Origin: Orbicella franksi
Lineage: Eukaryota
Direction: 5' to 3'
Assembly (NCBI GenBank): GCA_964199315.1
Contig: OZ116699.1
Coordinates: 38,192,001-38,256,000, forward strand
DNA: 64,000 nucleotides
Part shown: positions 36,601 to 38,970 of the stretch, in pieces
How positions within the stretch are numbered: the stretch's first letter is position 1
Layout: every line of letters begins with the position of its first letter
Notes under the pieces: model-generated
The model's database searches: none
Told to the model about the DNA's origin: nothing
What the model saw: only the letters and a program-made list of their open reading frames with translations
Translations under genes and position numbers: made by a program

Positions 36601-38970
36601 TGTCTCAAGTTCTACTACCACATGTATGGTGCAGACATTGCGACGCTAAATGTCATAATTAATGGGAACAACGTGTTCAGCGCAAGTGGGAATAAAGGCA
36701 ACAAGTGGCTGAGAGCGGCTATTGATGTCAGTTTATCAGGAAAGCATGCGGTAAGAGATATTATCATGCCTTTTGGAGGGTGCATCGTTTATTTCGATTG
36801 CAACGACTTTGCGTCGTTTTTCATGGAACTCGAGGTCAGCGACAGCACATGGTGCTTTTTCTTTGTTTTTTAGAACAATACATTTATCTAATCATAGCAA
36901 TACCTACATGCATGACTCAAGCGTATATGTCATTAAATTATACCTCCAATTTACATTCCTTTGCGACGTTATTTACTATGAAATACATTTTCCCAGTTGT
37001 AAAAGTAAACATTTTTATTTTAGGTCTTACGTGTATGTACCTTCGTTTAGATAAATAATATGAGTTATTGTCATTTCATCAACTCCCATGGCATCCATTA
37101 GCCTAGTGGGATAAGCGATTTTCATATTTTGTTAAGTTTAATTGGCTATTGGCGTGCAATTGTTTACGTAGCATCGTGCTCCTACTCAGATATTTTTGTT
37201 GTCACTTTAAATGCCTATCTTCATCTCTTGTAATGGTTGTAGGTTACATTTGAAGGAATACGGGGCAGTAATTACCAGGGTGACATCGCAATAGACGACT
37301 TTTTGTTGGAACCAGGGTCTTGTCCTTCAAGTGAGTAGATAAAGTGCAATATAGAGCCTGTCTCAAAATGCTACAATCGTTTCAAAGATAATTGTAGGCT
37401 ACATTTGAAGGGGTAAGGGGAAGCAGTTACCAGGGTGACATCGCTATCCATGATTTCCTGTTAGCTCCGGGGAGTTGTTTCGCAAGTAAGTACATAGAAG
37501 AGATTGTCAAGGTAAGGGAGTGAATCCCTCATATAGGTCCTCCAACTAAGATAATCCCTCTTAAGTTATTTTTAGACATTGTACCCACTTATTCCGAGGA
37601 ATTTAACTCGCGCGTTACGTGGTTGTTTTTGTGAGGATCTGTTTTTGTTTCGTTTTGTTTCGTTTTAAAGCAAAGAAAACCCTCCAACGCTGTGGGGATG
37701 TCTTCTGTGATATTTTGATTACGAGCAAAGGAGCTTCGGCTCTCGGTATGTTTTAATTCATTTCGAAAGTTTAATAGGAGTTTAAATAAGAAACGGATGT
37801 CCCCTACACAAACAATAACAACTGAATGATAGGCAGGGAAATGAGTAGACAAACGAGTGCAAAGCAAACAAACGCCCAAACACAAGCTTGGAAACGGAAC
37901 AAACAGATGGTCGAAAGTGCAGGAAGACGATGGCTGCCCGAGTAGCAAAAGCAGTTTAAGCGGCAACAGCAACAACGCCAAAGGCAACGTCGATTAAAAA
38001 ACGACTTAGAATTCAACCTACGAATCTCGCGAGAGTTTAGATTCATTGAGTTTGTCTATGCTGTCAGAAATATCCCAAACAGAATATGCCGGTAAGACAG
38101 CGTCAAAATTCGAAAAAGAAATTTTAAACATTGGCCGTCGTATAGTTCACGTTCTCTCGAATATGCAGAATGTGGCTATTTCACGTTGTTGTTTTGTGGT
38201 CTTTTGTAAACAACGGCAAAGAAATGAATTAAGAATTATAACGCACGCTTACACCGCAATTATACTCGCTGCCGTTAAAGTTTGCTTAATTTTAAAAACT
38301 CCCTAAAACCGAATAAACAGCCAAATACTGAACAGCCAAACTAGCACAAAACAAACGAAATCCCGGCCGAACAAAAAGACGGCTGAGAGTGCAGAAAACA
38401 TCTCTGCCATGAGACAAAATCAAAACATATAAAATGACGTTCCCGCCATTTCGAGAAAGTCGCTTCGGCTGTCCACGCATCGCGCGATTAGCATCCTCGG
38501 AAGAACTGGGTACTATGTCTAAAAATAACTTAAGAGGGATTACCTTAGTCAGAGGACCTATATGGGGGATTCACTCTCTTACCTTGATAATCTCTTGGTA
38601 TATAAGGATAACCCCGATAGACGATTTTTGATAAAATTATGGGGATCTCGTTAATAACTCTTCTATACTTCCGTGTCCTTCTCATAAGTAAACACACGAA
38701 TTCATTTTATACTTTCTCGTGCATTATGGCGGACCTGGAGTTTGAAATACGTCCAATCCTTCCGCTACTTGGAGAAAAGCATTAAAGAAAGAACTGCGAA
38801 AAGCGGCCCGAACTTACTTTTCCAAACCGCAAAACCGACTTCTTTCTCGTTATATCCAAACCATGTTTATTTCGAACTTGGCGTTTTGATTTATCGACTC
38901 TAATGAGTCTATAGAGTGACTGTCTGTACAACTCAGAGAATTCCTCGACGGCGAGAATTCCCGAAATTCA

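What the first reader, a model, noticed from the sequence alone, without database searches (positions are those of the whole stretch)
37243..37485. Duplicated last MAM exon acts as a potential protease on/off or either/or splice switch
Seen: two 88-nt phase 0-1 exons, C10 and C', separated by only 67 nt. Either one alone splices in frame to the protease. Including both reads ...CPS-SYI-TGA (stop at 37406-37408), and retaining the 67-nt intron reads ...CPS-SE-TAG, so both give a 10xMAM protein with no protease. C' shares GATTTCCTGTTA and the gtaagt donor with the paralogue's terminal MAM exon (63770-63857), whereas C10 is the internal type (GACTTTTTGTTG, gtgagt). Inference: array homogenisation pushed an internal-type exon in front of the ancestral terminal exon. 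This created mutually exclusive exons or a protease-less decoy isoform. C' also has D>H in GDIAIDD and an internal GGG|GTAAGG donor, so it may instead be decaying.
Basis: partly seen in the sequence, partly recalled or inferred. Interest (0 to 1): 0.75.

Follow-up and report, generated by a model that had tools for sequence, protein, structure and literature searches.

The report
Unused leftover copy of MAM exon
A coral protease gene carries a spare copy of its last MAM-domain exon 67 bases after the working one, but public RNA data show only the working exon spliced to the protease, so the spare looks like a skipped leftover rather than a splice switch.

Summary
C10 (37243-37330) and C' (37398-37485) are two 88-nt, same-frame, AG/GT-bounded copies of the third MAM exon, 67 nt apart. 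Either one alone reads through to the trypsin-like protease.

The gene has ten tandem 2.1-kb three-exon MAM units followed by three protease exons. It belongs to a cluster of paralogues with three MAM units each.

C' is an old lineage, 60-69/88 identical to every other b/c-type MAM exon. It keeps 12 states shared with the paralogue that the array has lost.

RNA contigs do not support a switch. The only exon joint found is 37330->42959, at depth 935 in X1 and 20 in X2. C' appears only in unspliced contigs, at depths (8.5, 4.2) slightly above other intron contigs.

C' also has the weakest acceptor tract, the only D>H at an otherwise invariant Asp, and no Pfam MAM match.

Verdict: a skipped, still-open relic exon. 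Stage-specific use is not excluded, because only three RNA contig sets were informative and the one raw-read run did not express the gene. The scan had noted this same stretch once before (s1-207821).

The parts
10589..37377 (+). Tandem array of ten ~2.1-kb MAM units. Each has exon A (135 nt), B (242 nt) and C (88 nt), with phases 1/1/0. Introns are included in the repeat.
   Evidence: Self-blastn shows units 80-97% identical including introns. tblastn maps A1-C10. Splice sites are listed. Pfam MAM PF00629 matches exons A, B and C10.
30441..36260 (-). LTR retroelement inserted in the A10-B10 intron. It has 168-nt LTRs that are 94% identical and RT/RNase H/integrase ORFs on the minus strand.
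   Evidence: Direct repeats at 30441-30608 and 36093-36260. Pfam RVT_1, RT_RNaseH and rve. Unit identity to unit 9 drops from 97.5% before the insertion to 92.8% after it.
36509..36750 (+). Exon B10, the middle exon of the last MAM unit.
   Evidence: Pfam MAM profile positions 44-124, E 1.6e-14. In X28 the letters before 37243 (one contig) match the B10-type exon-B end (..GGAAAGCATGC).
37243..37330 (+). Exon C10, the array-type last MAM exon. This is the exon joined to the protease in RNA.
   Evidence: 86-87/88 identical to C5-C9, while its flanking B-C intron is only 88-93% identical to the other units. Joint 37330->42959 with GT..AG ends in X1 and X2. Pfam MAM positions 131-158, E 6e-4.
37331..37397 (+). 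67-nt spacer. Its first 42-47 nt are homologous to the start of the internal C-to-A introns. The junction with unique sequence lies at 37373-37390. The last ~7 nt belong to the acceptor shared with other C exons.
   Evidence: blastn. Reading through it gives ...CPSSE-TAG. It is covered only by low-depth unspliced contigs.
37398..37485 (+). C', an open 88-nt copy of the third MAM exon of an older type. It is not seen spliced.
   Evidence: Sequence. Distances and lineage-specific changes. No Pfam MAM match at E<=0.1. Weakest pyrimidine tract of 14 acceptors compared. Only unspliced coverage in X2 and X28, and 0/7 words in X1. Identical in a second individual.
37498..38596 (.). Element bounded by 125-nt inverted repeats (37498-37622 and 38473-38596, 88% identical). 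It begins 12 nt after the C' donor and is multi-copy, as judged from the RNA contigs.
   Evidence: blastn. Many contigs run off in different directions at 38546-38599. It is present in the metagenome contig too.
39084..40994 (-). 636-aa reverse-transcriptase ORF inside the C10/C'-to-protease intron, heavily represented in RNA contigs.
   Evidence: ORF. Pfam RVT_1, E 1.3e-19. Depth 190-1500 in X1, X2 and X28.
42959..43154 (+). Protease exon 1. It holds the activation site ...SR|IVGG and the catalytic His in TATHC.
   Evidence: Pfam Trypsin positions 1-46. Acceptor at 42959. The joint from 37330 and the continuation after 43154 into exon 2 are seen in X1.
46218..46367 (+). Protease exon 2, with the catalytic Asp in NDIALL.
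51816..52209 (+). Protease exon 3, with GDSGGP and the stop codon.
   Evidence: Pfam Trypsin positions 103-220, E 7.7e-40..
63770..63857 (-). Terminal MAM exon of the convergent paralogue (gene 2), used for comparison.

Best explanation
C' is a skipped relic exon. The gene encodes a secreted-type protein with ten MAM domains and a trypsin-like serine protease. Its mature mRNA joins the array-type exon C10 directly to protease exon 1 at 42959, and C' is removed as part of the 5.6-kb intron.

Inferred history:
- The ancestral gene, like its two neighbouring paralogues, had a few MAM units. C' was the third exon of the old unit next to the protease.
- A rearrangement placed an array unit ending 42-47 nt after its C exon only ~20 nt in front of C'. 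This was either a deletion of the old A' and B' exons or a ~155-nt tandem exon duplication that was later homogenised on the upstream copy only.
- The rearrangement stripped C' of its native branch-point and pyrimidine-tract region, so the spliceosome now pairs the C10 donor with the protease acceptor.
- C' was a coding exon for most of its history, so it has not yet collected stops or indels. It has begun to drift, as the D>H in GDIAIDD shows.

Shown: the anatomy, the reading frames, the junction position, the C10->42959 joint, and the absence of any spliced C' in the runs laid.

Inferred: the order of events, the weakened acceptor as the cause of skipping, and recent loss of function.
For: RNA evidence:
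- The only joint at these exons is 37330->42959 (GT..AG), at depth 934.7 in X1 and 19.6 in X2. The joint depth in X1 is close to that of protease exon 1 itself (1183.6), so nearly all transcripts use it.
- X1 holds 0/7 sampled C' words while holding 0.92 of the last-exon words.
- In X2 and X28, C' lies in contigs that run on unspliced (37308-37753 and 37341-37513). Their depths are 8.46 and 4.2, slightly above the other intron contigs (4-5 and 2.5-3.1).
- In X28 the letters before 37243 (one contig) match the end of exon B, so B->C10 is used.

Sequence evidence:
- C10 is 98-99% identical to C5-C9, while the B-C intron next to it is 88-93% identical. This indicates selection on C10.
- C' has the lowest pyrimidine content (9/20) of 14 acceptors compared.
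- C' carries His where all 13 other MAM C exons examined have Asp.
- C' gives no Pfam MAM match, whereas C10 does.
- Array homology ends at 37372-37377 and C' homology begins at 37391.
- Both neighbouring paralogues have three MAM units plus the protease and no doubled C exon.
Against: - C' is still fully open, has canonical AG and a strong gtaagt donor, and fits the frame exactly.
- Its private branch is short: 8 changes, 4 synonymous and 4 not. That is no longer than the branches of the working lineages (12 and 7). This fits either recent orphaning or continuing selection.
- No variant in C' was found in three other individuals or haplotypes, though at ~1% diversity about one difference at most was expected.
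- RNA evidence comes from assembled contigs of three runs. Contigs drop rare isoforms.
- The raw-read run X22 did not express the gene, so no junction counts exist.
- Life stages and tissues of the runs are unknown.
Confidence: 0.72

Rival explanations
1. Conditional mutually exclusive exons. In some stage, tissue or stress condition, B10 is spliced to C' and C' to the protease, with C10 skipped. This gives a protease whose last MAM domain has a different C-terminal strand. Joint inclusion is prevented by the very short 67-nt spacer and punished by the frameshift stop.
For: - Same length, same phase, canonical sites and an open frame. Either exon alone is in frame, and both together give a premature stop. 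This is the classical layout of tandem-duplication MXE pairs, many of which rely on frame incompatibility (PMC5740500).
- C' has a short private branch with 4 synonymous and 4 non-synonymous changes.
- C' is identical in other individuals.
Against: - No C' joint in X1, X2 or X28. In X1 the C10 joint has depth ~935 while no C' word is present.
- No loose end at 37398 or 37485 among those listed.
- Weakest acceptor tract of those compared.
- His replaces an otherwise invariant Asp, and there is no Pfam MAM match.
- No stable RNA structure around the pair (z -0.30).
Confidence: 0.14
2. Protease on/off switch. Regulated inclusion of both exons, or retention of the 67-nt spacer, yields a 10xMAM protein without a protease (a decoy), or an NMD-targeted transcript that lowers expression.
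For: - Both routes end in a stop right after the tenth MAM domain.
- Contigs that run from C10 through the spacer and C' exist in RNA libraries X2 and X28.
Against: - Those contigs also run on past the C' donor, 268 nt (X2) and 28 nt (X28) into the downstream intron. Their depth is near that of other intron contigs, so they look like pre-mRNA or DNA carry-over rather than a defined isoform.
- No 37330->37398 joint was seen.
- X1 (polyA, high expression) has no C' words at all.
- A premature stop more than 5 kb of gene upstream of the last exon junctions would normally be degraded rather than translated (general knowledge of NMD).
Confidence: 0.07
3. C' is a fully dead remnant that has been evolving neutrally for a long time, and its open frame is chance.
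For: - Not spliced in RNA.
- The D>H change and the failure to match Pfam MAM.
- 88 nt is short enough to stay open by chance for a while.
Against: Introns of gene 1 and gene 2 are no longer alignable. C' nevertheless differs from the shared ancestral states at only 8 of 88 sites, half of them synonymous. Long neutral drift since the lineages split would have produced far more change.
Confidence: 0.07

Closest known systems
Mutually exclusive exon pairs born by tandem exon duplication (for example those catalogued in PMC5740500, with mechanisms reviewed in PMC9013439 and PMC6071210)
   Same: Two adjacent homologous exons of equal length and phase with canonical splice sites. Joint inclusion shifts the frame into a stop. 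The spacer is very short and could hinder splicing the two together.
   Different: The defining behaviour, each exon seen spliced on its own to the flanking exons, is missing for C' in the RNA examined. The two copies are old (73% identical) and not a recent duplication. No competing RNA structure was detected.
Anthozoan trypsin-MAM protease clade (Nematostella 'tryptome', PMC6767649)
   Same: N-terminal MAM domains followed by a C-terminal trypsin-like domain with His, Asp and Ser and an R|IVGG activation site. The family is expanded in anthozoans, and here there are three clustered paralogues.
   Different: This copy has ten MAM units kept alike by concerted evolution, where its neighbours have three. 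It also carries an extra orphan third exon.
Relic or orphan exons left at the edge of tandem exon arrays after unequal crossing-over or deletion
   Same: It lies at the array edge, escaped homogenisation, keeps ancestral states, and is skipped by splicing.
   Different: It is still intact: open frame, both splice signals present, no indels.

Membership tests
Mutually exclusive exon (MXE) pair | Neighbouring exons with sequence similarity, equal length and the same reading frame | tested here: met
   88 nt each, 64/88 identical, both open in frame 0.
Mutually exclusive exon (MXE) pair | Joint inclusion is incompatible (frameshift and premature stop), while each exon alone is in frame | tested here: met
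   In-silico isoforms.
Mutually exclusive exon (MXE) pair | Each exon is observed in transcripts spliced on its own to the flanking constitutive exons | tested here: not met
   Only 37330->42959 was found. C' appears only in unspliced contigs. X1 holds no C' words. Limits: contigs of three runs, and no raw-read counts.
Mutually exclusive exon (MXE) pair | A mechanism enforcing exclusivity, either steric hindrance from a short spacer or competing RNA structures | tested here: inconclusive
   The 67-nt spacer is short. No branch point was mapped. The fold of 37200-37530 is no better than shuffles (z -0.30).
MAM domain (Pfam PF00629), C-terminal segment | Match to the end of the MAM profile, including the G-D-I-A-I-D-D motif | tested here: not met
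   For C', no family at E<=0.1 and His replaces the first Asp of DD. C10 matches profile positions 131-158 at E 6e-4. All 13 other C exons examined keep Asp. C' is nonetheless clearly homologous (tblastn E 1.5e-10).
Trypsin-MAM serine protease (whole gene) | MAM domains plus a trypsin domain with the catalytic triad | tested here: met
   Pfam MAM and Trypsin hits. TATHC, NDIALL and GDSGGP are present in the exon translations.

The most novel reading that the evidence does not exclude
C' is a live alternative exon used only in a stage or condition not sampled here, such as larvae, settlement or immune challenge. It would swap the last beta-strand of the tenth MAM domain next to the protease activation site. 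The 67-nt spacer and the frameshift stop would make the choice strictly either/or. That would be a mutually exclusive exon pair created by tandem-array dynamics in a cnidarian.
Probability: 0.12. Interest if true: 0.6.

Novelty: new member of a known kind. Interest (0 to 1): 0.22.

Why it matters
As it stands, this is a caution for annotating repeat-rich coral genes. An intact-looking, in-frame duplicate exon should not be placed in gene models or read as regulation without junction evidence.

It is also a clean small example of how the edge of a concertedly evolving exon array leaves an un-homogenised exon that preserves ancestral states.

If C' turned out to be used, it would be a rare documented mutually exclusive exon pair in a cnidarian, sitting right at the MAM-protease junction.

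Tried and rejected
- Raw-read run X22 gave no reads on the gene, only on repeats, so no junction counts were possible.
- A lay of at most 6,000 letters could not hold both B10 and the protease exon. B10->C' could therefore be judged only from loose ends. None at 37398 was among those listed, but 49 loose ends were not shown.
- A protein search with protease exon 1 in the 90% clusters and in the 50% representatives returned only ORF-style fragments called on unspliced genomic contigs, plus multi-trypsin proteins. No spliced model shows which MAM exon precedes the protease.
- I looked for intron homology between gene 1 downstream of C' and gene 2's terminal intron. Only a simple repeat (41258-41361 against 63413-63571) and the exon edges align, so positional orthology of C' with the paralogue's terminal exon is not shown.
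- I looked for C' grouping with 'terminal' exons of paralogues. It is equidistant from all b/c-type exons (63-69/88), so the 'terminal-type versus internal-type' reading is rejected.
- I looked for remnants of A' or B' exons between C' and 42959. There are none.
- I looked for a first, divergent 'a'-type MAM unit of gene 1 upstream of 10603. None was found within 8 kb upstream of the window start.
- I looked for RNA structure around the pair. There is none above shuffles.
- A word search of earlier scan notes found nothing further.

Full report
**1. What is there**

The window is eukaryotic DNA with about 36-44% G+C. It lies on contig C2 of a 497-Mb genome. Public runs that hold it are labelled as corals.

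- C10 at 37243-37330
- C' at 37398-37485

Each is 88 nt, preceded by ttgtag, and followed by gtgagt (C10) or gtaagt (C'). A 67-nt spacer separates them.

They share 64 of 88 bases. Both are open in the same frame ([29 protein letters not shown] and [29 protein letters not shown]).

I built the isoforms in silico:
- C10 alone or C' alone reads on through protease exons 42959-43154, 46218-46367 and 51816-52209.
- Both exons together stop at ...CPSSYI-TGA (37406-37408).
- The retained spacer stops at ...CPSSE-TAG.

**2. The gene**

A self-comparison shows ten tandem units of about 2.1 kb, 80-97% identical with their introns included. Each unit has three exons: A of 135 nt, B of 242 nt and C of 88 nt.

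Pfam places exons A, B and C10 on MAM profile positions 1-43, 44-124 and 131-158. It places the downstream exons on Trypsin. His, Asp and Ser motifs and an R|IVGG activation site are present.

Unit 10 is split by an LTR retroelement at 30441-36260.

A convergent paralogue (gene 2, minus strand) ends at about 58513. A third paralogue (gene 0, minus strand) lies upstream of the window. Both have three MAM units plus the protease and no doubled C exon.

Trypsin-MAM proteases are a family known to have expanded in anthozoans (PMC6767649).

**3. Where C' comes from**

Homology of the last unit to the other units runs through C10 and stops 42-47 nt after it, at 37372-37377. Similarity of C' to any other C exon begins at 37391. 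A rearrangement junction therefore lies at 37373-37390.

C' is 60-64/88 identical to the ten array exons and 66-69/88 to the b and c exons of genes 0 and 2. It is an old, separate lineage that does not group with 'terminal' exons.

Against the array consensus and gene 2:
- C' has 8 private changes, 4 synonymous and 4 not.
- The array has 12 private changes.
- Gene 2 has 7 private changes.

Introns of genes 1 and 2 can no longer be aligned. A private branch as short as 8 changes therefore means C' was under coding constraint for most of its history.

My reading, which is inference: C' was the third exon of the old unit next to the protease. It was cut off from its A and B exons by a deletion, or it is the downstream copy of a ~155-nt tandem exon duplication. 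The upstream copy stayed in the homogenising array.

**4. What the RNA shows**

Twelve RNA runs hold the last protease exon and six hold C' words. I laid X2, X28 and X1 (contigs) and X22 (raw reads) on 37200-43199.

The only joint at these exons is 37330->42959 with GT..AG ends. Its depth is 934.7 in X1 and 19.6 in X2. In X1 that is close to the depth of protease exon 1 itself (1183.6). The 28-29 letters on the left of the joint are the array-type exon end, which is identical in C5-C10 and unlike C'.

There is no 37485->42959 joint and no 37330->37398 joint.

C' is covered only by contigs that run unspliced across both of its borders:
- X2: 37308-37753 at depth 8.46, against 4-5 for other intron contigs in X2.
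- X28: 37341-37513 at depth 4.2, against 2.5-3.1 for other intron contigs in X28.

This is what pre-mRNA or DNA carry-over looks like.

X1, a polyA library with the highest expression, holds none of the seven sampled C' words. In X28 the letters before 37243 (one contig) match the end of exon B, so B->C10 is used. X22 did not express the gene.

**5. Signs that C10 is the working exon and C' is not**

- C10 is 98-99% identical to C5-C9, while its neighbouring intron is 88-93% identical to the other units.
- C' has the poorest pyrimidine tract of 14 acceptors compared, 9/20 against 12-17/20. Its native upstream intron was replaced at the junction.
- C' has His where all 13 other C exons examined have Asp.
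- C' alone gives no Pfam MAM match.
- No RNA structure stands out around the pair.

**6. What keeps the door open**

- C' is intact and has a strong donor.
- It is identical in X2, X28 and an independent metagenome contig. That contig covers 37168-38762 at 99.0% identity, and none of its 16 differences lies in C10 or C'. At that level of diversity about one difference or fewer was expected in 88 nt, so this says little about selection.
- Contigs drop rare isoforms, and I had no raw-read junction counts.
- The stages and tissues of the runs are unknown.

**7. Verdict**

- Most likely (about 0.7): C' is a skipped, recently orphaned relic exon. The gene makes a single 10xMAM-protease product through C10.
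- Conditional either/or use: about 0.14.
- A protease-less or NMD switch: about 0.07.
- A long-dead remnant: about 0.07.

The layout resembles mutually exclusive exon pairs from tandem exon duplication, where frame incompatibility commonly enforces exclusivity (PMC5740500). The defining behaviour was tested here and not met, so I do not file it as one.

Interest is low. This is an ordinary by-product of exon-array dynamics, worth a note for gene annotation.

Noticed in passing
window 30441-36260: An LTR retroelement (168-nt LTRs 94% identical; RT, RNase H and integrase ORFs on the minus strand) sits in the A10-B10 intron. Identity of unit 10 to unit 9 is 97.5% up to the insertion and 92.8% after it, so the insertion coincides with a boundary of array homogenisation.
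   Followed up: partly
window 39084-40994 (minus strand): A 636-aa reverse-transcriptase ORF lies inside the last MAM-to-protease intron. RNA contigs cover it at depth 190-1500 in three runs, with few differences. It is an actively transcribed retroelement or family.
   Followed up: partly
window 37498-37622 and 38473-38596: A 125-nt inverted-repeat pair (88% identical) bounds a 1.1-kb element that starts 12 nt after the C' donor. Many RNA contigs diverge at its ends, so it is a multi-copy, foldback or MITE-like element. It is also present in the metagenome contig L015.
   Followed up: partly
G000:C2:38157687-38176520 (loci L010-L012), minus strand, upstream of the window: A third paralogue has three MAM units plus a protease. 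tblastn shows an in-frame stop in exon B of its third MAM unit (…LLFTGKK*LQFYYHMF…), so it may be a pseudogene.
   Followed up: no
window 43145 (X1 loose end) and gene 2 at 62514-58513: One X1 contig leaves protease exon 1 at 43145 and continues with gene 2's sequence (…IIRLGAHYRT…). The convergent paralogue is therefore expressed in the same sample.
   Followed up: no
window 4300-9400 compared with about 8.4-16.2 kb upstream of the window start: A direct segmental duplication of non-coding-looking DNA lies between gene 0 and gene 1. The similarity shows in all reading frames and includes stops.
   Followed up: no
G000:C2:28702546-28704877 (L014:3546-5877): A single MAM unit elsewhere on the same chromosome has a C exon that is the closest relative of the array type (81-82/88). 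This is closer than either neighbouring paralogue.
   Followed up: no
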